NCBI RefSeq assembly: GCF_902652985.1
Contig: NC_047028.1
Span: 24,924,001-24,988,000, forward strand
Direction of reading: 5' to 3'
Origin: Pecten maximus
Lineage: Eukaryota
Length of the DNA: 64,000 nt
The translations under genes were made by a program, and so were the position numbers. Below are positions 5,087 to 64,000 of the stretch, one piece after another. The notes beneath the pieces were generated by a model. That model was given only the letters and a program-made list of their open reading frames with translations. It ran no database searches and had not been told where the DNA came from. The first letter of the stretch is position 1; the number at the start of each line of letters is the position of its first letter.

Positions 5087-8000
5087 TTAAGAAGAATGTT
5101 TCGGAAAGACCACTCCAAACAAAATCAGTATACACACTGCTACACACGATGTTGCACCCATACAATGGAATGTCACATGATATGTACATGTTGCATCACG
5201 GAGGTAACCTGAAAGATAAAAGATTTGTAGAAATGAAACACACTTATGTATATAACTAAGTATCGGAGTATCATGCAGCTAATACAAACAGTACAGTCAG
5301 GTAAATTGCAGTATTATTGTTTAAACCGTTTGAAAACCATTGCAAAATGATATATATAAACTGATATTAAGTAGGCTTATTGGCCTGGATGGAAATGTGC
5401 AAGTAGTCTTAATGTGGAAGGAAGACAGGGCACCCTTTGAAAACCAACGTGTTCTTTCTGGTGACCCTAATACCTTCACGTCCGATCGTAGAATCGAACC
5501 CCCACCAAAGCGAAAGGAGAGCGTTATCACTGTGCCACTCCACCACCCATAGCACTCTACCTCAATATTATCAAACCGATGGCAACAAGAGACCACCCTT
5601 TTTTCAGAAGACCTTTTTACAGAACGTTCAACGCAAAGGCCAGAATTGTTTAGAGAGAAGAAAAAATAAATACGATCTCAACCAGTTCACTAGTAGTTGC
5701 ATTAAATAGTCAAAGAGAAGCAAAATGGTTTGAAATCTTATTCATACCAAATTCTCCAAAAAGACGAGAAGAACATGACACCTTTAAAATTTGATATATG
5801 ATGTATTATTTTTTAAATTTAGCGTGTTGTTTCCATGATAATGAACATATTAGCAATTGCTATGGTTTGAAAGAGAGAAGAATTAAAAAAAAGTAAAACA
5901 GGTTATAATGGACGTCTTACCTAGTAGTGGTACCATTACACACAGGACGACACTTTTTGTAAAGATTGCAATACCAATGGCAGCAGCGAAGTCTTCATCA
6001 CCAACTATTTCCTTTAGCAATGGATTGCTAATTGCAAAAAGTACACCTGACATCAATCCAAATAACGCTGAAAAAATTGAAAGCATCAAGAAAGAGTCGT
6101 AAAAATAATTGAACTGTGGTAGTATCGCAGTAAAGACTTGTGAAACCAGAATTAGATGGTGTTTCTTTATCCAATGAGTATCGGCAAGGTAACCACTTAA
6201 AAGTCTTCCGAGAAAATCACATATTGAATGTATTGAAATTAGCATTGCTATGTTTGAACGTTCGATTCCAGTTTCCTTCGCATATGGTGGTAGATACGTA
6301 GTTATTGTTTCGTTACTGATAGTTCCTGTAGTATAAAACCCAACAAAGATTAAAAACGACCTGTTTTTCAGAAGTGTGGTTCCACTCTTTTTGCATTGTG
6401 TAAGCATTAAACTTAACCAATGGCCGGGGGACCCAGATGCTTGTGATCCCATGTCAGATAGTTTTTCTTCAGTTGAAAAGTTTTGTTGTGAAAAAGATAT
6501 GCTGGAAACGTCTGCACATTCGAAAGCTGACATAGATGGAAAATGCTTTAAGTCTTTATCATCAGATGATACTCTATGGTGACGGACCTGGTTGTGATCT
6601 TTTTTACATCCCGAATGAAGTAAATTTGGCAGCGAATTCGTAGCCAATTGCAAATCCAGTTCTCCTCTCTTCATAATTTTATTGTTAAGTGCTATTGTTG
6701 ATAAAGTAGCTTCAGAGATTGACATTTTAGATTTCAGCTGGTTACCAGATTCACTGATAAGCGGTTGGTCCATTTTGTTATGATCGTTTGTGTCTTTTGA
6801 ATCGGAAGATATAATGTGTTGTAAACCACCCAGATGATCTTTTCGTTTTAATATTCGACGATAGAATTCTGGTGGACGCTGAAGAACTGCAGCCGGAAGT
6901 GCGTTGAAGATAATGCCGGATGTAAGTAGGAGAGCGCCATGCAGCGTGTATTCCCGAACTATAAATTGGATCATTGGGGGCATAACGAGTCCACCGAGGG
7001 AAAATCCAGCCATCAGTATTCCATTGGCCAGTCCAATACGTTTTCGGAAGTACTTACTGACCTGAACTATACTAGTAGGAACGATGAGTGCACAGCTCAG
7101 TCCTTAAACAAAAACATTTAACGATATAAAAGTCATGAAAATTTCTCCAAAAGTATTCATGCCATCCAGAAAATAGTTTTGTTTAGGATATATCGACTTA
7201 AAATGAAGTACATACGATTTATTAAAGATGCTCGTCGACAATGTATAGGCTAATTCTCGCATAAAATGCATATTTGGTACCCCTGATATATCTTACTAAT
7301 ACCATCTAATAACTCAATTCTATATCGGCATCCTAAAAATACTGATAAGATCAAAACTTACAAAGTACAAAGGCGAGGTTGGCTAAAGTGAAAAGTATGT
7401 AGCTTTCGGTCTTTCATCAAAATGTGCAATATAGGTAGTCAATGATTGGTAGATCATAGTTATTCTTTGTTGGCATTGTAGCTTATATAAGAAATTTATT
7501 GAAATACGTAATGTGTAGTGTTTTTGATTTCATTCATTAAAGGGGCATTCCTTTGTTTGAATAAAGTTTAAGTCTGCAAAGTTTTACACTTATGATAAAC
7601 CAAAGTTCTTCGAGTATTAAGTCCTGAAAATTCTTAATTCGACCCGAAGTATCACTAATTACCGCAAAGACATTTCATTATATGTTGGTGCAAACACTCA
7701 TTTTATCATCGTTTGGACATACATTTCATCAATTGAATTTGTGCATAGTTTTGATGTCCGAACGAAGGAATGCCCCTTGAAGGTATACTTTTACTTTGAT
7801 GTTCTGGTAAGTGACAGGCTTTTATATCTCACCATTAAGGACACTCTGGCAAAGGATAAGGAGCTCGAGTCGGTTAGTCAAACTGCTGAGGGCGTAGCCC
7901 AATGCACTAAGGATGATACCAACCAGCTGACATCTCCGCACGCTCTGGTACCGTAACAGGATCATCAGTACGGGGACATCTTGACAAACAGACATCATCA

Positions 8001-14808: not shown

Positions 14809-17800
14809 TTAAATGGCAGTAGAAGTTGTTTCTTTTTTAACGTAAGCCTTATCAAACAGTATTAATAAGATGGCCGATGCTAATGACGTTGCACCCATGA
14901 AGTGGAATGTGGCGTGGTATTCGCTGGTACAGTCTCGGAGATAACCTGAAATGAAACATACACATATGTAAATTGGATAACACATATCGGGACATGCTTT
15001 TAAATTGTATGAAAAAAGCAAATCAGGTGATCAAAATGTAGATAACCCGTAAACAAATTAATCTACCAGTACCAGGCAGCTGCCCAACGTGGATTTCGAT
15101 CTTAGCGTAACAATATGGATACGGTAGTCATATTCTCACTTGAAGAATGACTCTTGTATCAGTTTATACCAGAATCTCAAAGAGAAGCACTACCAGAAAG
15201 GAAACTAAAGCTGAGAGAGTACGTTATACTAGCATTTTAAGAAACTGTATAGCGGAAAGCTATCAAAGCTAATCTATTAGGGTGAAAAGTGAAATAAAAC
15301 AAATGTTGTCGTCTCCTATAATCGTGTAGTGAGACAAAGGTATTTGACCATATTTTTGTACATATAAAAACAACAATTAGCTATGTTTGGCTGTCTTGTA
15401 TATTCCATAGTCTTTATTATACTGATAAAATGTGGAACATCTTCTTACCTAATATTGGAATTATTCCAGAAACGAAAGATCCTTTTATTAATATCATGAC
15501 GGCCATACCAGCAGGAAACATGTCTCGACCAATGGCAGTTGATAGAATTGGTGGAAACAATACAAATATGATACCCGCGGTAAGTCCATAGCCAGTTGAG
15601 AAAAGGGCAAGTGACCAATAGGTTTTAAACAATGGGGTCATCTGCATTATTATACCGGCTATCATCTGGGTAACCATTACGATTTGCTGTCGTCTAATCC
15701 ATGGGAGATCTGCTATATAGCCATTGAAGACACGACCTTAAACACAAAATTATAAGTGTCATTATGCTAATGCGTGATAAAAGTTATGTCCATTGATATA
15801 AAATAAGTAAGTAATAGTTAACCCATGCAGGTTCAGCGGTCGATAATTCCGTAAATGAATAATAGATGGAAATAAGAGGCGAAGGACTATATGAAGATGA
15901 ATATACCCTGTATTGTTGTAAGTTTTTTTTTAAAGATATTCATTACAAATCTTCAACTGGGTTAACTATATTTTGTTCGTATCCTGGTATTACTGATTTT
16001 AGAATTATGGTTTTGTTTATGATTATGTTGATATTCTCTGTTGTTATATGATTAAATAGTAGGGTTTTCAGTATTTCGGTACTTTAATTTTGTGTTAAAA
16101 GTTTCAAATAGTAGGACTTTCAGTACTTTGATTTTTTTGTCATAAAGATAGTAGGACTTCAGCTATGTTCAGTTCAGTTATGTTTTTATCAACTCTCCTA
16201 CCAAGGAGATAAGAATAGAGAAGAATAACGTCTAGATAATTTGTGTCATTGACAATGGTACAATATGTCTTCCTATCTCATACTGATACATCACAAGATG
16301 ATCCATTTTGTGCTAGTATACAATATCATGTACCATTCCTTTTGACCTTAAATGGATATTGATCGAAAATATAGCTTGGTGATGTGAAAAAGAGTTATCA
16401 CCAAAATAGATATAGGAAAAGTTCAGTTTTACTCACCGACGAAATCACACATACACTGAATGGAGACAAGAATTGCTATCTTAGAGTTTGACACTCCCCT
16501 GTCCTTCGCGAAAGAAGGTGTAAAGAGATGAGACGTTTCTGGTCCAACACTTGATAAACAATATATTGGAATAAGTATCAGAAACTGTTTATTTTTCCAC
16601 AATTTCGGGCTGAACATTTGCCAGGATTTACATTCGTTAAACAAACGTTTCATCCAACACGACAAGGAAGAAGATTTTGACGAATCATTATCTTTCGGTG
16701 CATTCCTTACTATCTCTTGCGATAGATTTGTAAATTCTCCTATACTGAAGTATTTATTAATACGCCCTGAATACACAGTATTACACTGTACTGCTAATGT
16801 TTCAATATGGCTCTCACTGTTATTTTTCTCTTTTGTTGATACACGATTTGGTATGAATTTAGGCGAAGAGAGATTAGGAGCCGAAGCACTTGCGTTGGTT
16901 GCATCTTGATTATATCCTGAAAGCAGGGCCAACGATTGATACGTCGGGTGAGAGTCATTAAATGCTGTAGAAATGCCATTAATTGTATCTGATTTTACAC
17001 AAATGTTTGGTGGTATTGTAGTGCTTTCTTGTGTAGATTGCTTAAATTCATTCACAACAAAACTCCCTTCCTTCGGTCGTCTGTTTGTTGTCGCTTGTGT
17101 CTTTTTATAAAAATCCATCGATCGTAGTAAGCAGGCTGGCGGGAGACAGTTCAGTATGATCCCTGCTGTCAGTAGCAAAGCCCCCTCCAGTCTGTACTCA
17201 TCTAGAATATATCGTACAAGGGGCGGTAACGCGACGCCCCCAAGAGCATACCCTGACATCAGGACGCCATTAGCTAACCCAATACGTCCCTGAAAATATT
17301 TACCGACCAAGACGATGGCTGTTGGGTACACTAGCGCCATTCCTAATCCTGAAACAAGTAAAAAGGAATTACTTGTAATTTGCAGTTGTACATGTCACGA
17401 ATGACGGACGTTTTTAAAGGAATATCTCTCTAAAATACATATTAGGCACGATAAAAAAACCGCCCCACATATCATATCACATTATATCGAAAATGAATGT
17501 GAACTGGTCTTTACCATTAGAATATCACAGAAAACGTAAAAGGACTCTAACCCAAGTTAAGATGTAGCAACTGTGAATTGGGCAGTAATGAAATGAACAT
17601 GCATATAAGATGAAGATATTTACGACTACTTGTGACTTCGTCAGGAGAAATAAAACTTCTTATATAACAGGGTGTCAGTATAGTAATACACGTAATAATA
17701 AGATGATCCAATTTCCAATTAGGGTTTCCTTACTATCAAGAATGTGTATTGCTGTAGCATATTAGATGATATTGTAGCTTACCACTGAGAATGCTCTGTG

Positions 17801-40614: not shown

Positions 40615-43600
40615 TCAATCATACACACTGGAGCCAAACTTATGGTAGAGGACAGCAACATGTCGTTTGAATGGATCCACAACTAAATAAGAAAATGTCT
40701 GTTCATGGCGTTTGTCTGCTGGATAGTACATATGGCCGTCATCCTAAACAAAACAAATATGAATGTATAAATTGAAACTGATTTATTTTATATTTATCTT
40801 TAAAATTTATGTTTAGGTGAATGGACACTTTAAAATGTTTGATTAAAAAATACACTTTAGAAACATTAAATCATGAAACATCTATGAAGAATGATTAAAG
40901 ACTTTTGTGTTTAACCTTTTCAATATACTACACTTCATTATTTTAGCATAATATACTATCTTTATCAGTAAATAAGCCTCTTGGCCACAAATAAGCTATC
41001 TTTTTCATTTTTGCATAATTATCAATTTCGAAACAGAAAGTGGTTCACAACAGCCCATCCTAACTTTAATACTAATTTTTTACACTCGATAAGAGGTTCA
41101 TTGGAGGATAAATACCGTACTATTTTGAAATTGTCTATTTTACAAAAGAAGGGAAATGTTTTATTATACATCTGTATAAATAACATAAATAATGCACTTA
41201 CTGAAGCTTCCACTTTGAACACACTTGATATAATGTTTAACTCCTTGGTTTCTGAGTTCTTCTGCACACTTTAAAAAAGAAATTATTTCATGAATAAAAC
41301 GTTTTCTAAAAATGCATTCAATATGACGTTTGTTGATGAAAATAGAAAAAATTAGATCCTGAAGGGAAATAAGTCTCCGCTAGAAAACTAAGATGGTATA
41401 ATGTCTTCAATACACTGGCAGTTTCTACAACCGTATTCGAAATTTTGGACCATAAATACATGTATAAACATGAATCATCTGTAATACTTCATTACTTTTG
41501 ATAACTTTTTAAAAAGCAGACAAATTTTGTTGTTTTAAGGTATTTGATGTATTATTATAAAGGCTGAATAGAAAAATCACAACTATAAATCAATTTCTCA
41601 TGGAAATGCAGAAAATTAAAAAAATATTGAGAAAAGAAAATTACTGGTTTGTTATCGTAATATTTCAAGGGGACTCTTCTTACCCCCCCCACCCCCATCA
41701 AGTGAAATCAATAGAACAAAACTATTCTGTGCATGCCAAAGAGACATAACGTACCTCAAAACTGGACTAACTCGCTTATAAATTTAACACAGTAAAATGG
41801 CGCTCATATGGAATTTACCTAACTCTTTGTATAAAAATACTCGGGTACTTGTACATTTGTTAATTGGTTTTGCATGAAAATCCAAAATGTTTGTATAAAC
41901 ATGTACAGACATATACTGTGACAGGTGTTAGTGTTCTCACCTGATAAGGTCCTTGTACATCTGTTTTGTAATATCTAAATATGGGTCAATGATATCCTCA
42001 TATTGACAGATCTTCCCTCCCAGACAGATGTGCTGGAACAGTCGAAACAGGAATTCTTCTCTCTCGCTGTCATTGTATAAACAATAGTTGTCGGAGTCAT
42101 CAATCAGCAGCAGCTACAACAGAAAATTATTGTCATGTGACTTTTCGACAAACGTCAATCATCAAAATATAAAACATGTGATGGATGTACAGTGTGGAAG
42201 CACTTGTATGTAAAAAATATAAAAATCTTCTCTCAGGTGAAAATGTAAATACCTTCCTCAGTTCATCAGAAATCGTGAAATCTTGATAAAACTCATCAAA
42301 GCATTTGCGAATGGCACCATTTTCTCTAACAATATCATTGTCTGTGAGTCGGTCAAACAGCGTCATAGACAACACCGTGCAGGGTACAGGTTCAACTGTC
42401 ACACTAGTTGCAGACACACCTATAAAAACAAATATACGCTTATAAATGTAACCAGTACCAGCAATACAGCATTGGTTAAAATAACACGAAAAACAACATT
42501 TTCTGCTCTTTGAAAACAAAGTATCTTGACAAAAAACAAAAAATACCCTGTATTGGGATATCAATATAGAAGTTTATAAGTAACCAGTACTCACCTACTG
42601 GTGACCAGGTGCAGTTTTCTGATACGGTTTGCAGAGTTGAAACCACATTAGGGTCCTTTAGAAAATCCTACAATAACAGCACACATTTTTATGATTTCAG
42701 AAGTAATAGGTGGAGTAGCCTCCCTTAGATGGTGATAAAATCATTTCATGTAAAACATATTAAAACAGTAGACCACAATTGTAATATAAAACCTTACCTG
42801 ATTGTTACACCTAAATATCAAACAGTGTTGTCATAATTTTAGATACGCACATGCTAGTTCCTGCAAAGCTACAGCATTTAAATTGAAAGAGGTGGAAAAT
42901 TACAATTTCAAAGCTATATTCAACTTTTCATGCAGGTGACTCCTATTTATTTATTTATATTTTTTTTGGAAAATCAAATACTGGTTGGCAGCTAATATTC
43001 ACTATGTTGCTTGTGACAAAACCACACTTTACACCACAAGCACTTTCTAATGCTTTGGATTTGCAGATATTTTCAGATTTTGGGCTGTTTCCATTTGCTA
43101 TATGGGACTTGAATATAGGGCGGAACAATAACGCTCCTATCGAAGCGTAGCCAGAGTTTCCTCTTGCCCTGCCATCATGAGGCATGGCGTTAGGGCCAGA
43201 GGAAACTCAGGCTAACCTAAGTGATTAGCTAATGGGGATCAACATACTAGACTTCCTCTTCAGGTGCATAGTTCTAAAAGCAGAGAGTATAATGTCATTT
43301 TACTAGCTCAGACTAGTGGGATTTCCCCTTTAGCCTTATGGTAGGATAATTGATTGCCTTGAGAGAGAAAGGTTGCTTGTTCTAAGCCTGGCAAGAGTAT
43401 TTTTCATTAAAATCCTTCCTATCATATTGTTATAACAATGCGGACAAGTTGGTCCTGTTCCATCAAATGATATTAATGATACCATGTCTTACATGTTCAT
43501 TGTATTTCCTGACAATATTGACAATTAATTTTTGACATGTAGGCCTAATAACTTATGAAGTAAACTAGCAAATTAAAACAGAACATGTACAAGGGAAAGC

Positions 43601-61300: not shown

Positions 61301-63527
61301 TTATATTTTTGCAGAATATTTTCTATATGTTTTATTTTTATGATTTTTAATATTTACCACTATGAAACGAAACATTAACGACTTTTTAATATGATTTATT
61401 TCAAATACATCCAAACTGGCACAAACTTGCACAATAATCGCAGCAGGGAGCAATTAGGGCTTGTTTCGAGTCAAATCAAGCACAATAAAACACACTAACC
61501 CCTTTGTTTTAAGTATATATATATTTGTTTCTTTAACATTTCACTGTTGAACCTTAAATGTCAACCTTAACAAGCAAGGTACGATCCAATGTCTCTATAG
61601 TCACGAATAATCTGTTTACATAATCCAAGGTTAACCGGGATGTATTGTTTATTAACATTACCACCATTGTCTTGCGTCTTTGTAGACGGAAGCTAGTAGC
61701 TTTATCACTTTACCACACACTAGGGTTGAGGACACGTTTTTGTTCTTTTTTAATCCATCAAGATTTATTGATACCCATGCAGTTTTGTCTGTTGTCAACC
61801 AAAGTTGAACAGTTTTAATGGTTTTATGTTCCCACAACATCTAAGGCTATATTCGTGGGTGACTGCATGTTAGGTAACGACTTAGGGTCAGTTTAGAGTG
61901 TTATCATACTGACATATCATAACCTGGATAAATTAACATTATATTCAATAAGGTCATTTTCTAACGAAAACAGTCAACCTTCTAGTGACTATCAACTAAC
62001 AAAACTAAATGTCAAGAAGAGAAAAGTATTTTTGGGTCAAAGGTCAGAACAAATAACATTCCTTGTTTGAATGGACGTTAAACATCACGGTAAAGTTGAA
62101 ATATTTCCAATTTACAGGTAGATTGGAACAAATCAGATAATTAGTCCGTAAACTGTTGCGATAAATGGAGTTGATAGACGTTTTAGACCTTTTGGAGAAA
62201 ACAAATTCAAATGCTTGATTCTTGTGCAAATTTGTTTTCAAATTAGTCGACTCTGACATGTGTACTGGTAATACCGGATGTAAGAAGCGGACGGATATAT
62301 CGATCTGCTTCCATTTCTAGGTACAAAATTATTCTCTCTGTAGTTTCTGGACTTTAGAATACAATTGCTTTCAATTCTTTTAATGAACACCACAAGTTTA
62401 GTCTTCTACAGTGTAGTTCTGCAAGTATAATGAGTTCGGCATATGGAAATAGATATTGATTGGAATTAACGAAAAATAAACAAATAAATAGACCAAACAT
62501 TCCGGTTGATATAGTTATAATTGTTATACTATAATCTTATTCCATTTTTTAAAATGCTTCTTCCTATACTATTAAAAAAAAAACAAAAGTTAACAAGGGA
62601 CATTTCTGCATATCTTGCTGTGGATATTATTTATCACACAAAGCTTATCGATTGCAGAAGTTTGCTGCCACTAACATCTTTTATCGCTGTAAGATTTACA
62701 TACCTTTGAAGATGTTGTTGATAGATACTCCTATGGCAAAGAAAGCGCTTACCTTTTTGTAGTATGTATTATTGTATTGTCAGCACTGTGACCGGCCTAT
62801 AGATACATTGCCAAGTTCCAATATTAGTTCCTCGTTATATGGCATACACAGGTGTGCATGGTACAGCATTATTGCATTCAACAGACGCAAACAACGCTAT
62901 GACAGATTTTTTTTTCTTAAATATTATTTTCTCATTTTACTATTAATGATATACACACACGTACTGAAACAGACACTCCCTATAAGTTGTATACCTTACC
63001 AATGACGTGAAGGTGTTAAAAATCAAAGTGTTATTTTGTAATTCCAAGTTCTCTTTTATCCTGTTACATAAACTGTAATGTAATGGGTTTGTATCGTTAC
63101 GCCTTCAACATTTACAAAGGCAGATTGTGTAATACTTGTTGATGTATTTAAGGTTCAATTTTGATGCATTTCTCACGGGACTTCACCTTGAGATGTATAA
63201 TAGCACACCTTTGTTTGTATAACAATATATCTTCTGTATGATGAGTGGTACCGGGAGCCATTTTAATTAGTACTAGGTAAAACATTTAATCAACGGCATT
63301 GATTGCATTTTTGTGTTTTTCAGATGTATCAAAGTGATGGATCAAAATTAGATTTCATATATTAAATTGTTTAGGACTTTAGTTCTTTTGAAATACAAAA
63401 TTGTAAATTATTCAAATCTGGTATTGTAAATTATGAGACTTATTGAATTATTTGATTGATTGTTTAACCTCCTGATTTCTGACAACTGTTTTGGCCTATG
63501 TCGTGGTTTTTTGGTCGACTCCATTCA

Positions 63528-64000
63528 CATCACTGGCGAGTTCTGAACGACGAAACAGTCATATGATATCCCTATCATCACAGACGAGGCCTGGAACAAC
63601 GAAACAACTGTATACTGTCCTAAACATCACTGACGAGTCCTGAAAAGACGAAATAGCTATATGATGTCCCTATCATCACAGACCGAAACAGCTGTATGAC
63701 GTCCCTAGCATCACTGACAAGTCCTGAAAAGACGAAATAGCTATATGATGTCCCTAGCATCACAAACCAATCCTGAAAAGACGAAATAACTATATGATGT
63801 CACTAGAATCAAAGAACGAAACAGCTGTATGACGTCCCTAGCATCACTAACAAGTCCTGAAAAGACGAAATAGCTATATGATGTCCCTAGCATCACAAAC
63901 CAATCCTGAAAAGACGAAATAGCTATATGATGTCCCTACCATCACAGAACGAAACAGCTGTATGACGTCCCTAGCATCACTGACATGTCCTGAAAAGACG
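63528..64000 (+). ncRNA. Tandem array of minimal hammerhead-ribozyme motifs (49-bp monomer, 35-bp deleted monomer, 133-bp higher-order repeat); runs off the window
   Basis: Intact unit at 63625-63666: CATCA-CTGACGA-GTC(ctgaaaa)GAC-GAAA-TAGCTA-TA-TGATG. This reads as helix I, core CUGANGA, helix II, GAAA, palindromic helix III, NUH site (AUA, cleavage after 63661), helix I'. About 11 units are visible; the others have core substitutions or a helix II deletion. Confidence 0.8.

What the first reader, a model, noticed from the sequence alone, without database searches (positions are those of the whole stretch)
63528..64000. Satellite made of minimal hammerhead ribozymes (49-nt monomer)
Seen in sequence: the monomer is CATCA-CTGACGA-GTC-ctgaaaa-GAC-GAAA-TAGCTA-TA-TGATG-tccctag. 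Established knowledge: CUGANGA + helix II + GAAA + helix III + NUH + helix I is the hammerhead catalytic core. Minimal type I hammerheads with a loop-less palindromic helix III are known from Penelope-like retroelements and amphibian satellite RNAs, where they cleave as dimers. Here nearly the whole repeat unit is the ribozyme, far shorter than the few-hundred-nt monomers described for metazoan retrozymes. The unit at 63625-63666 has every core nucleotide, with predicted cleavage after A63661. Inference: this is a self-cleaving, possibly retro-amplified micro-retrozyme or ribozyme satellite whose transcripts could be cut to unit-length RNAs.
Basis: partly seen in the sequence, partly recalled or inferred. 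Interest (0 to 1): 0.93.

Follow-up and report, generated by a model that had tools for sequence, protein, structure and literature searches.

The report
Decayed hammerhead ribozyme tandem array
The 49-base repeat at the end of this window is a worn-out copy of a repeat family scattered through this (probably king scallop) genome. Each unit of the family is one self-cutting hammerhead RNA motif, multiplied out of the ribozyme part of a small mobile element, and here only one of 21 units still has all the essential bases.

Summary
Unit 63624-63667 has every hammerhead core base, with the predicted cut after A63661 (Rfam Hammerhead_1, 26.8 bits, below the 34-bit cut-off).

The array is only 891 bp (63527-64417) and 21 units long. 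Twenty units are dead: CpG-type core mutations, and seven 35-nt units lacking CUGANGA. It grew by DNA-level duplication of 133/84-nt blocks of already dead units.

It belongs to a genome-wide family. There are at least 1,941 exact ribozyme-core matches at roughly 500 loci, in arrays of 2-31 units. The consensus is a complete hammerhead. In tandem, each junction reads as a cis type III hammerhead (Rfam 43-47 bits; the predicted minimum-energy fold agrees), so no intermolecular dimer is needed.

Many arrays lie between conserved left and right arms, and solo arm-ribozyme-arm copies exist. The 49-nt unit is the ribozyme of a roughly 270-350-nt retrozyme-like element without its body.

No Penelope ORF lies nearby. 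There is no helix covariation beyond chance and no RNA evidence for this locus.

Verdict: a compact new variant of a known kind, dead here. This scan has already noted the same family on other pieces of this genome.

The parts
63383..63526 (+). Left arm of the carrier element. Its first 68 nt are the conserved head, and its last bases (…CCATTC) run into helix I of the first unit.
   Evidence: Positions 63383-63450/52 match other loci at 78-85% identity. The same arm precedes solo ribozyme copies at L002, L047 and L049. Related left arms precede arrays at L018, L032, L039, L043 and others.
63527..64000 (+). The in-window part of the tandem array. The whole array runs to about window coordinate 64417 (L004:1017) and holds 21 units: 13 of 49 nt, 7 of 35 nt and 1 partial.
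   Evidence: Tandem Repeats Finder periods of 49, 35, 84 and 133; wrap-around alignment to the family consensus; per-unit table.
63624..63667 (+). The only unit with a complete hammerhead core (type I reading). Helix I is ACATCA/TGATGT; the core is CTGACGA; helix II is GTC/GAC; then GAAA, palindrome TAGCTA and TA. The predicted cleavage site lies between 63661 and 63662.
   Evidence: Rfam RF00163 at 26.8 bits, E 8e-4, model positions 1-45. The motif scan gives helix I 6/6, helix III palindrome 6/6 and helix II 3/4. The unit has 0 core mismatches.
63662..63696 (+). A 35-nt deletion unit (TGATGT CCCTATCATCACAGACCGAAA CAGCTG TA). It lacks CUGANGA and the 5' strand of helix II, so it is dead. Further copies lie at 63795-63829 and 63928-63962, with four more beyond the window end.
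   Evidence: Per-unit table. The exact 26-mer of this unit type occurs only in this array in the whole genome (4 hits).
63697..63829 (+). One 133-nt higher-order block (49+49+35). It is repeated at 63830-63962, and partly repeated after that. The copies share the inactivating changes CTGACAA/CTAACAA and CAAACCA and the 35-nt unit.
   Evidence: Tandem Repeats Finder period 133 with 3.4-3.6 copies at 87-88% matches, and period 84. Shared mutations are listed.

Best explanation
The feature is a decayed, 3'-truncated copy of a dispersed non-coding element of this mollusc genome. The genome is probably the king scallop: the assembly size and contig count match my recollection, and this was not verified with a tool.

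**The parent element.** It is about 270-350 nt long: left arm, one minimal hammerhead, right arm. In one lineage the ribozyme plus the last ~6 nt of the left arm became a 49-nt tandem unit, TGATGT-CCCTA-ACATCA-CTGACGA-GTCC-TAGAA-GGAC-GAAA-CAGCTG-TA. This equals a tandem or circular parent monomer with the whole body in the helix I loop deleted. Array-bearing elements with this same junction then spread to roughly 500 loci.

**Predicted action in an intact array (inferred from sequence and folding, not assayed).**
- The palindrome ACAGCUGU of unit n pairs with that of unit n+1 to form helix III.
- UGAUGU/ACAUCA closed by CCCUA forms helix I.
- GUCC/GGAC closed by UAGAA forms helix II.
- Every junction is therefore a complete cis type III hammerhead. 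It would cut after GUA and release 49-nt RNAs with 5'-OH and 2',3'-cyclic phosphate ends.

**At this locus.** That capacity is gone, because 20 of 21 units carry disabling changes. The array reached its present length by DNA-level duplication (unequal exchange or slippage) of 84- and 133-nt blocks made of already dead units.
For: **Shown by tools**
- Array anatomy and the single intact unit.
- Higher-order periods of 133 and 84 with shared inactivating mutations.
- Genome-wide family: 73 scored Rfam Hammerhead_1 hits, 21 over the cut-off, many spaced 49 nt apart.
- 1,941 exact matches to CTGANGAG-N11-CGAAACAGCTGTA against 0 for the reversed control.
- 2,260 exact 20-mers of the 3' half, including 34 loci on one 60-Mb chromosome.
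- Forty-four arrays of 2-31 units were aligned in register, with the same CCCTA junction throughout.
- Intact array L020: Hammerhead_3 at 43-47 bits (E about 1e-8) and Hammerhead_1 up to 36.5 bits.
- A 57-nt junction segment has the type III three-way junction as its minimum-energy fold (-18.7 kcal/mol, z -2.5). A lone 49-mer does not fold this way (z -0.6).
- Conserved right arm of about 85-90 nt ending TTTGTACAATCC, starting directly after TGATG in 21 of the sampled arrays.
- Left arm with a sharp 5' boundary.
- Solo arm-ribozyme-arm copies at L002, L047 and L049, loci that were picked by arm similarity alone.
- The window copy has the left arm at 63383-63526.
- Decay signature: CpG transitions make up 25% of core substitutions.
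Against: - The arms were recognised at only about half of the sampled arrays, and the window copy has no right arm.
- No target-site duplications could be defined, and no autonomous partner element was found. The way the element moves is therefore unknown.
- The 'body deletion' origin of the 49-nt unit is inferred from junction positions only.
- No tandem full-length monomers were seen, apart from one right-arm-end to left-arm junction at L016.
- Ribozyme activity is untested, and no loop-loop tertiary contacts were examined.
- Core positions are only slightly better kept than the rest (0.86-0.97 against 0.65-0.97), and the sample was chosen for having an intact motif.
- Paired fractions in all three helices equal the independence expectation.
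Confidence: 0.78

Rival explanations
1. One reading: this locus is an active self-cleaving micro-retrozyme or ribozyme satellite whose transcripts are cut to unit-length RNAs.
For: One unit (63624-63667) keeps every core base and a perfect helix I. Identical palindromes ATAGCTAT in nearby units could supply helix III. Family sequences occur in contigs of RNA-labelled runs of the same species.
Against: - Twenty of 21 units lack essential bases, and seven lack the whole CUGANGA box.
- The segment around the intact unit folds no better than shuffles (z +0.55).
- No listed run holds this locus, and no contig covers its unique flanks.
- At most one cut per transcript is possible, so unit-length RNAs cannot arise here.
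Confidence: 0.04
2. Family-level rival on origin: the 49-nt arrays were made at the RNA level. A reverse transcriptase would have copied tiny 49- or 98-nt circular RNAs by rolling circle (a true 'micro-retrozyme'), followed by integration. On this view they did not arise from a DNA deletion plus unequal exchange.
For: - The unit equals a circular or tandem monomer minus its body.
- The same junction occurs at more than 40 loci on many chromosomes.
- Array length varies from 2 to 31 units.
- Metazoan retrozymes are proposed to spread in this way (PMC7229834; 10.64898/2026.07.22.740005).
- Inverted head-to-head arrays (L015) and an inverted second copy next to the window array recall Penelope-type insertions (PMC8557442).
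Against: - Arrays have fixed flanking arms and a preferred end phase at TGATG|CAGTTT. This fits transposition of a linear arm-array-arm element.
- Local higher-order repeats show that DNA-level growth happens.
- A 49-nt circle cannot form helix III on its own.
- No reverse transcriptase partner was found, and there are no circular-RNA data.
Confidence: 0.2
3. The arms belong to a DNA transposon (a Helitron/Helentron- or MITE-type element, as known for bivalve tandem-repeat carriers). The hammerhead array would then be mere internal cargo with no RNA-level role.
For: The layout of short conserved arms around an internal tandem repeat resembles bivalve MITE/Helentron-associated satellites (my own knowledge, not tested). 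The family shows neutral decay and no covariation.
Against: - No terminal inverted repeats are seen between the left-arm start and the right-arm end.
- There is no Helitron-type 3' hairpin-CTRR end (by eye).
- The arms abut the two strands of helix I exactly, as expected if they are the loop-1 body of a type I hammerhead monomer.
- The hammerhead is integral to solo copies.
Confidence: 0.1
4. It is an ordinary minisatellite whose likeness to a hammerhead is accidental.
For: Most units here fail the motif, and the Rfam score in the window is below the gathering score.
Against: - The family consensus has all invariant bases and three helices.
- It scores up to 42.1 bits against Hammerhead_1 (cut-off 34) and 46.6 bits against Hammerhead_3.
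- There are 1,941 exact motif hits against 0 for the reversed control.
- Helix II and the core (CUGAcGAGUCC…GGACGAAAC) match the Rfam metazoan consensus base for base.
Confidence: 0.02

Closest known systems
Metazoan non-LTR retrozymes (type I hammerhead tandem repeats of cnidarians, mussels and amphibians; Cervera & de la Peña 2020, PMC7229834; Li et al. 2026 preprint 10.64898/2026.07.22.740005)
   Same: - It is a non-coding, AT-rich, dispersed short tandem array carrying a type I hammerhead of the usual metazoan sequence type.
- Solo 'monomer' copies occur beside multimers.
- The parent arm-ribozyme-arm element (about 270-350 nt) falls in the published monomer range of roughly 170-400 nt.
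- A mussel, another bivalve, has thousands of such ribozymes.
   Different: - The repeated unit is 49 nt (sometimes 51): the ribozyme plus a 5-nt loop, with no body.
- It is embedded between single-copy arms, where published retrozymes are whole-monomer repeats.
- Target-site duplications, circular RNA and a PLE partner were not shown here.
Minimal hammerheads of Penelope-like elements (Cervera & de la Peña 2014, PMC4209133; Lünse et al. 2016/2017, which I could not read)
   Same: Helix III is reduced to a short palindrome without a loop, so a second copy is needed to build it. There are many decaying copies per genome.
   Different: - PLE min-hammerheads sit in pLTRs about 3 kb apart around an RT/GIY-YIG ORF. 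They have a long helix II (6-8 bp) and often a bulged base.
- Here helix II is the canonical 4 bp and no PLE ORF is near.
- The partner palindrome is supplied 49 nt away in cis, which gives an ordinary type III fold.
Hammerhead satellites and SINE-like repeats: newt satellite 2 (about 330 bp), the Schistosoma Sm-alpha SINE-like element (about 335 bp) and the cave-cricket pDo500 (my own knowledge; reviewed in PMC6765202)
   Same: They are tandem or dispersed repeats whose transcripts carry a type I hammerhead with a weak helix III. That ribozyme becomes active when two copies are present ('double hammerhead', Forster 1988, as cited in PMC4209133).
   Different: The unit is 6-10 times shorter. 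No tRNA-like Pol III head was found in the arms. Activity and transcripts of defined length have not been shown.
Type III hammerheads of viroid-like RNAs (Rfam RF00008)
   Same: The junction-spanning 55-57-nt segment aligns end to end with the type III model. Helices I and II are closed by loops and helix III is open, at 43-47 bits.
   Different: The score is just under the 48.5-bit cut-off. The two strands of helix III are the same palindrome from successive repeat units, so each palindrome can serve either neighbour.

Membership tests
Hammerhead ribozyme (Rfam clan CL00010: RF00163 type I, RF00008 type III) | Invariant core: CUGANGA, GAAA, and U16.1-H17 at the cleavage site | tested here: met
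   Met by unit 63624-63667 and by the family consensus. It is not met by the other 20 units of this array.
Hammerhead ribozyme (Rfam clan CL00010: RF00163 type I, RF00008 type III) | Three helices radiating from the core, with the G10.1-C11.1 pair | tested here: met
   The consensus has helix I 6 bp and helix II 4 bp starting G-C, and helix III 8 bp formed between the palindromes of adjacent units. This is the minimum-energy fold of L020:5254-5310 and appears in the Rfam alignments. The window segment itself does not fold this way (z +0.55).
Hammerhead ribozyme (Rfam clan CL00010: RF00163 type I, RF00008 type III) | Score at or above the curated Rfam gathering threshold | tested here: inconclusive
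   The window unit scores 26.8 bits against 34, so it does not reach the threshold. Family members elsewhere score 34-42.1 bits on RF00163, so they do. On RF00008 they score 43-46.6 bits against 48.5, just under.
Hammerhead ribozyme (Rfam clan CL00010: RF00163 type I, RF00008 type III) | Mg-dependent self-cleavage at the predicted site | not testable with these tools
   This needs in-vitro transcription of 1-, 2- and 3-unit constructs.
Metazoan non-LTR retrozyme | Type I hammerhead inside short tandem repeats with no coding capacity | tested here: met
   No ORF other than a spurious frame across the array.
Metazoan non-LTR retrozyme | Repeat monomer of about 170-400 nt containing the ribozyme plus a body | tested here: not met
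   The repeated unit is 49 nt (35 nt in the deletion form). Only the non-repeated carrier (arms plus one ribozyme, about 270-350 nt) is in that range, and it was seen as solo copies.
Metazoan non-LTR retrozyme | Flanking target-site duplications | tested here: inconclusive
   The element ends are only roughly defined. No convincing duplication was seen by eye at L002, L047 or the window. At L016 the motif TTGTACAATCC flanks both sides, but this motif is itself the conserved right-arm end.
Metazoan non-LTR retrozyme | [quoted passage not shown] | not testable with these tools
   Only assembled contigs were available. Family-like contigs (82-95% alike) are present in RNA-labelled runs, but ends and circularity cannot be read from contigs, and this locus is not covered.
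Penelope-like element pLTR hammerhead | Location in repeats flanking an RT plus GIY-YIG ORF | tested here: not met
   There is no such ORF in the window, in the 20 kb downstream, or beside 44 arrays. The one RT found (L021) is LINE-like and is inserted into an array.
Sm-alpha-type SINE with hammerhead | tRNA-derived head with Pol III A and B boxes | tested here: not met
   ARAGORN finds no tRNA-like gene in the window arm or in seven element-bearing loci. This detects whole tRNA folds only, so a degenerate promoter cannot be excluded.

The most novel reading that the evidence does not exclude
In intact arrays of this family, transcripts are cut at every junction into 49-nt RNAs that religate into 49- or 98-nt circles and are copied back into DNA. 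This would be the smallest known retrozyme: a mobile element that is nothing but a hammerhead ribozyme. The dual type I/type III topology would act as the switch between cleavage in multimers and stability in monomers.
Probability: 0.12. Interest if true: 0.8.

Novelty: new variant of a known kind. Interest (0 to 1): 0.4.

Why it matters
Hammerhead ribozymes in animal genomes are known from satellites, Penelope-like elements and 170-400-nt retrozymes. Here the repeated unit has shrunk to the ribozyme itself plus a 5-nt loop.

The family shows in one genome how a ribozyme module can escape from its carrier and become a minisatellite. It also gives a natural case in which the same sequence reads as a weak type I or a complete type III hammerhead, depending on copy number.

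It offers a compact substrate for testing whether tandem context alone switches self-cleavage on, and how small a retrozyme-like RNA can be.

For genome annotation, these arrays (roughly 500 loci, of the order of 10,000 units) should be masked as one repeat family. They should not be taken for locus-specific regulatory ribozymes. The copy in this window is a dead relic.

Tried and rejected
1. **Penelope ORF search.** ORF lists and Pfam on the window, the next 20 kb and the array flanks gave only host exons (MFS transporter, CFAP300), a kinase gene and one LINE-like RT inserted into another array.
2. **Covariation.** In 295 unique units the paired fractions equal the independence expectation in all helices. 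The genome-wide 2x2 count for the outer helix III pair (CG 2044, TG 113, CA 80, TA 23 against 6.2 expected; odds ratio 5.2) looks positive. However, it counts units within arrays, and single and double variants share arrays, so I do not take it as proof of selection.
3. **The 35-nt unit as a spreading subfamily.** Rejected: its 26-mer occurs only in this array.
4. **RNA evidence.** No run holds the locus. Laying contigs at 82% likeness shows family-like sequences in RNA-labelled runs, but none bridges the unique flanks, and contigs cannot show ends.
5. **Metagenome scan** for the consensus core: 0 hits.
6. **tRNA-like head** in the arms: none. The bacterial-type promoter scan is irrelevant here and was unremarkable.
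Only five such loci could be read.
8. **Lünse et al.** (PMC5785218) could not be opened.
9. **Literature searches** for hammerhead with scallop, bivalve satellite or minisatellite found no description of this family. The library is open-access only.

Full report
**1. The observation.**
Tandem Repeats Finder reports periods of 49, 35, 84 and 133. The 133-nt period scores best, with 3.4 copies at 87% matches.

The window is G000:C14:24924001-24988000 of a 918,306,378-base, 3,983-contig genome with about 36% GC. That size and contig count match my recollection of the king scallop assembly. Earlier notes of this scan also call it king scallop. I did not verify the species.

Reading on past the window end (L004) shows that the array stops at about window coordinate 64417. 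It is 891 bp long, so it is not a large satellite.

**2. How intact is it?**
Rfam gives one hit in the window: Hammerhead_1 at 63624-63667, 26.8 bits, E 8e-4. That is below the 34-bit gathering score, and nothing in the 64 kb reaches a gathering score. The 24-nt core pattern has 3 hits with up to 3 mismatches, against 0.00 expected.

A wrap-around alignment to the family consensus resolves 21 units.
- Thirteen are 49 nt.
- Seven are 35-nt derivatives. A 14-nt deletion has removed CUGANGA and the 5' strand of helix II.
- One is partial.

The other units carry CTGACAA, CAAACCA, CTAACAA, CTGACAT, CGGACGA or AAAA in place of GAAA.

The same disabling changes recur at 133- and 84-nt spacing. The array therefore grew by duplication of multi-unit blocks after the units had died. 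That is a DNA-level process which does not need ribozyme activity.

The RNA fold of 63605-63710 is no better than shuffles (z +0.55).

**3. The family.**
- A whole-genome Rfam Hammerhead_1 search scored 73 candidates. Twenty-one are over the cut-off (up to 42.1 bits), and many lie at 49-nt spacing.
- The strict pattern CTGANGAG-N11-CGAAACAGCTGTA occurs 1,941 times, against 0 for the reversed control.
- The 20-mer GACGAAA-YAGCTR-TATGATG occurs 2,260 times.
- Listed hits fall in 34 separate places on the 60-Mb contig C1. This extrapolates to roughly 500 loci.
- In my sample, 21% of units carry the exact 15-mer, so the genome holds of the order of 10,000 units. That is a rough inference.

I aligned 44 arrays (538 units) of 2-31 units. 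One array has a 51-nt period. The consensus is TGATGT CCCTA ACATCA CTGACGA GTCC TAGAA GGAC GAAA CAGCTG TA.

In this sample, which was chosen for holding at least one intact motif, 33% of units keep the whole core. The window array, at 5%, is among the most decayed.

**4. Topology.**
The spacer between ribozymes is only 5 nt. Each junction can therefore be read in two ways.
- The type III reading is a complete ribozyme. Helix I (UGAUGU/ACAUCA) is closed by CCCUA, and helix II (GUCC/GGAC) by UAGAA. Helix III is formed by the palindromes ACAGCUGU of units n and n+1.

Rfam supports both readings on the intact array L020: Hammerhead_3 at 43.5-46.6 bits (E about 1e-8, cut-off 48.5) and Hammerhead_1 up to 36.5 bits. 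RNAfold gives exactly the type III three-way junction as the minimum-energy structure of the 57-nt junction segment (-18.7 kcal/mol, z -2.5). A lone 49-mer does not form it (z -0.6).

'Cleaves as a dimer' thus becomes 'needs 1.16 units in cis'. This is the known double-hammerhead principle (PMC4209133) in its most compact form. Catalysis itself is inferred, not shown.

**5. The arrays sit inside a small element.**
In hammerhead-sense orientation, many arrays end at phase TGATG. A conserved arm of about 85-90 nt follows: CAGTTTAATTCATTTTGGCTCT…TTTGTACAATCC. It was recognised in 21 of the sampled arrays. A genome search with this arm gives hits that stop at the same 3' boundary.

Upstream lies a left arm ending …CACTTTAGGCCCTTA|ACATCA, with a sharp 5' boundary.

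The window copy has this left arm at 63383-63526. Its first 68 nt match other loci at 78-85% identity. Five loci were picked by that arm alone. Three of them (L002, L047, L049) are solo elements: left arm, one degenerate or partial hammerhead, right arm. In that subfamily similarity extends about 70 nt further upstream.

The arms abut the two strands of helix I. In a tandem or circular form they would therefore be the 'loop 1' body of an ordinary type I hammerhead monomer of about 270-350 nt, which is the published retrozyme size range (PMC7229834).

The 49-nt unit is that monomer with the body deleted down to the last ~6 nt of the left arm. All sampled arrays share this junction (positions 6-10 are 79-94% conserved). 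I therefore infer a single origin followed by dispersal of array-bearing elements.

The window copy ends out of phase (…CACTGA|tatgg) and has no right arm. About 110 nt further on, on the minus strand, lies a second copy with a hammerhead remnant and a full right arm (L004:1126-1247).

**6. Tests of function and mobility.**
- Per-position identity is 0.86-0.97 in the core, 0.65-0.97 in the helices and 0.76-0.94 in the loops. This is only a faint preference.
- Paired fractions in helices I, II and III equal the independence expectation.
- The window's TAGCTA palindrome is a double change from CAGCTG. Genome-wide it occurs 23 times at 11 loci, against 6.2 expected from the single changes (odds ratio 5.2). 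Units within arrays are not independent, and singles and doubles share arrays, so this is suggestive at best.
- CpG transitions are enriched among core substitutions (25%), as expected for neutral decay of methylated repeats.
- No Penelope RT/GIY-YIG ORF was found in the window, the next 20 kb or the array flanks. The RT at L021 is LINE-like and interrupts an array.
- The arms hold no tRNA-like head.

**7. RNA.**
No listed run holds the locus's own words. I laid contigs of four runs of the same species label on L004:1-1400 at 82% likeness or more. One run is explicitly RNA-Seq; the other three are guessed to be RNA. This placed 135-564 contigs per run on the array. Most are under 90% alike, and their loose ends read the family consensus. 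The unique flanks had no cover.

Members of the family are therefore present in transcriptome-type assemblies, often inside longer contigs and on both strands. Nothing shows transcription of this locus. Contigs cannot show cleavage ends or circles, and DNA carry-over is not excluded.

**8. Comparison and novelty.**
The closest known things are:
- metazoan non-LTR retrozymes (PMC7229834; 10.64898/2026.07.22.740005);
- PLE minimal hammerheads (PMC4209133);
- the classical hammerhead satellites and SINE-like repeats (PMC6765202).

The family works like these but fails the retrozyme monomer-size criterion and the PLE location criterion. Target-site duplications and circular RNAs could not be tested.

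Open-access literature searches found no description of a 49-nt hammerhead array in scallops or other bivalves. Lünse et al. could not be read.

This scan has already noted the same family on other pieces of this genome, with the same type III and mobile-element readings. I reached my reading before seeing those notes and re-tested it here.

**Verdict.** This is a real hammerhead-derived repeat and a compact new variant of a known kind at the family level. At this locus it is a dead, truncated relic that grew by ordinary DNA duplication.

Noticed in passing
L004:1126-1247 (minus strand; window coordinates about 64526-64647, just beyond the window end): A second copy of the carrier element in inverted orientation, with a hammerhead remnant (L004:1208-1247) and a full-length right arm (L004:1126-1205). 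It lies about 110 nt from the end of the array, so the two copies are tail to tail.
   Followed up: partly
L015:893-1604 (G000:C5, around 37226000): Two 49-nt hammerhead arrays abut head to head on opposite strands (about 7 and 8 units). This inverted arrangement recalls Penelope-type insertions.
   Followed up: no
L021:6770-8516 (G000:C2, around 13124000): A LINE-like reverse transcriptase ORF (Pfam RVT_1, E 9e-31, YADD motif) is inserted between two parts of a hammerhead array on the opposite strand. It is not a Penelope element.
   Followed up: partly
L019:5296-6639 (G000:C1, around 15817300-15818640): An array of about 27 units with a 51-nt period instead of 49, and helix II variant GTCA…GGAC. 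This is a length variant of the family.
   Followed up: no
L004:4251-4558 (about 4.3 kb beyond the array, outside the window): Inverted blocks of a 22-nt tandem repeat (TATCTCGTTAAAACGCGATAAT and its complement) form a long hairpin. There are weak Rfam hits to plant MIR4371/MIR4372 models (65 and 40 bits, well under the cut-offs). It is probably a MITE-like palindromic repeat.
   Followed up: no
L004:6539-6606 and L004:8306-8355: Short 18-nt tandem repeats built on the palindrome TGACGTCA (ATGACGTCATAGTAACTG). Their sequence resembles a cAMP-response element.
   Followed up: no
window 5883-7013 (-), 16429-17340 (-), 42133-42564 (-): Stop-free frames with Pfam hits to the Major Facilitator Superfamily (E 1e-16 and 1e-7) and to CFAP300 (E 2e-20). 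These are exons of host genes on the minus strand, far from the array.
   Followed up: partly
L044 (G000:C1, around 55544000), sequence just upstream of the larger array in its sense orientation: A stretch with a tRNA T-arm-like motif (GGGAATCGAACCCCG) lies directly next to a hammerhead array. ARAGORN calls no tRNA there. It may be a tRNA-derived SINE fragment.
   Followed up: no
L007:2249-3044 and L007:734-826 (G000:C15, around 18199300-18201600): Unrelated 31/60-nt and 21-nt tandem repeats flank the 20-unit hammerhead array. This suggests a repeat-rich neighbourhood.
   Followed up: no
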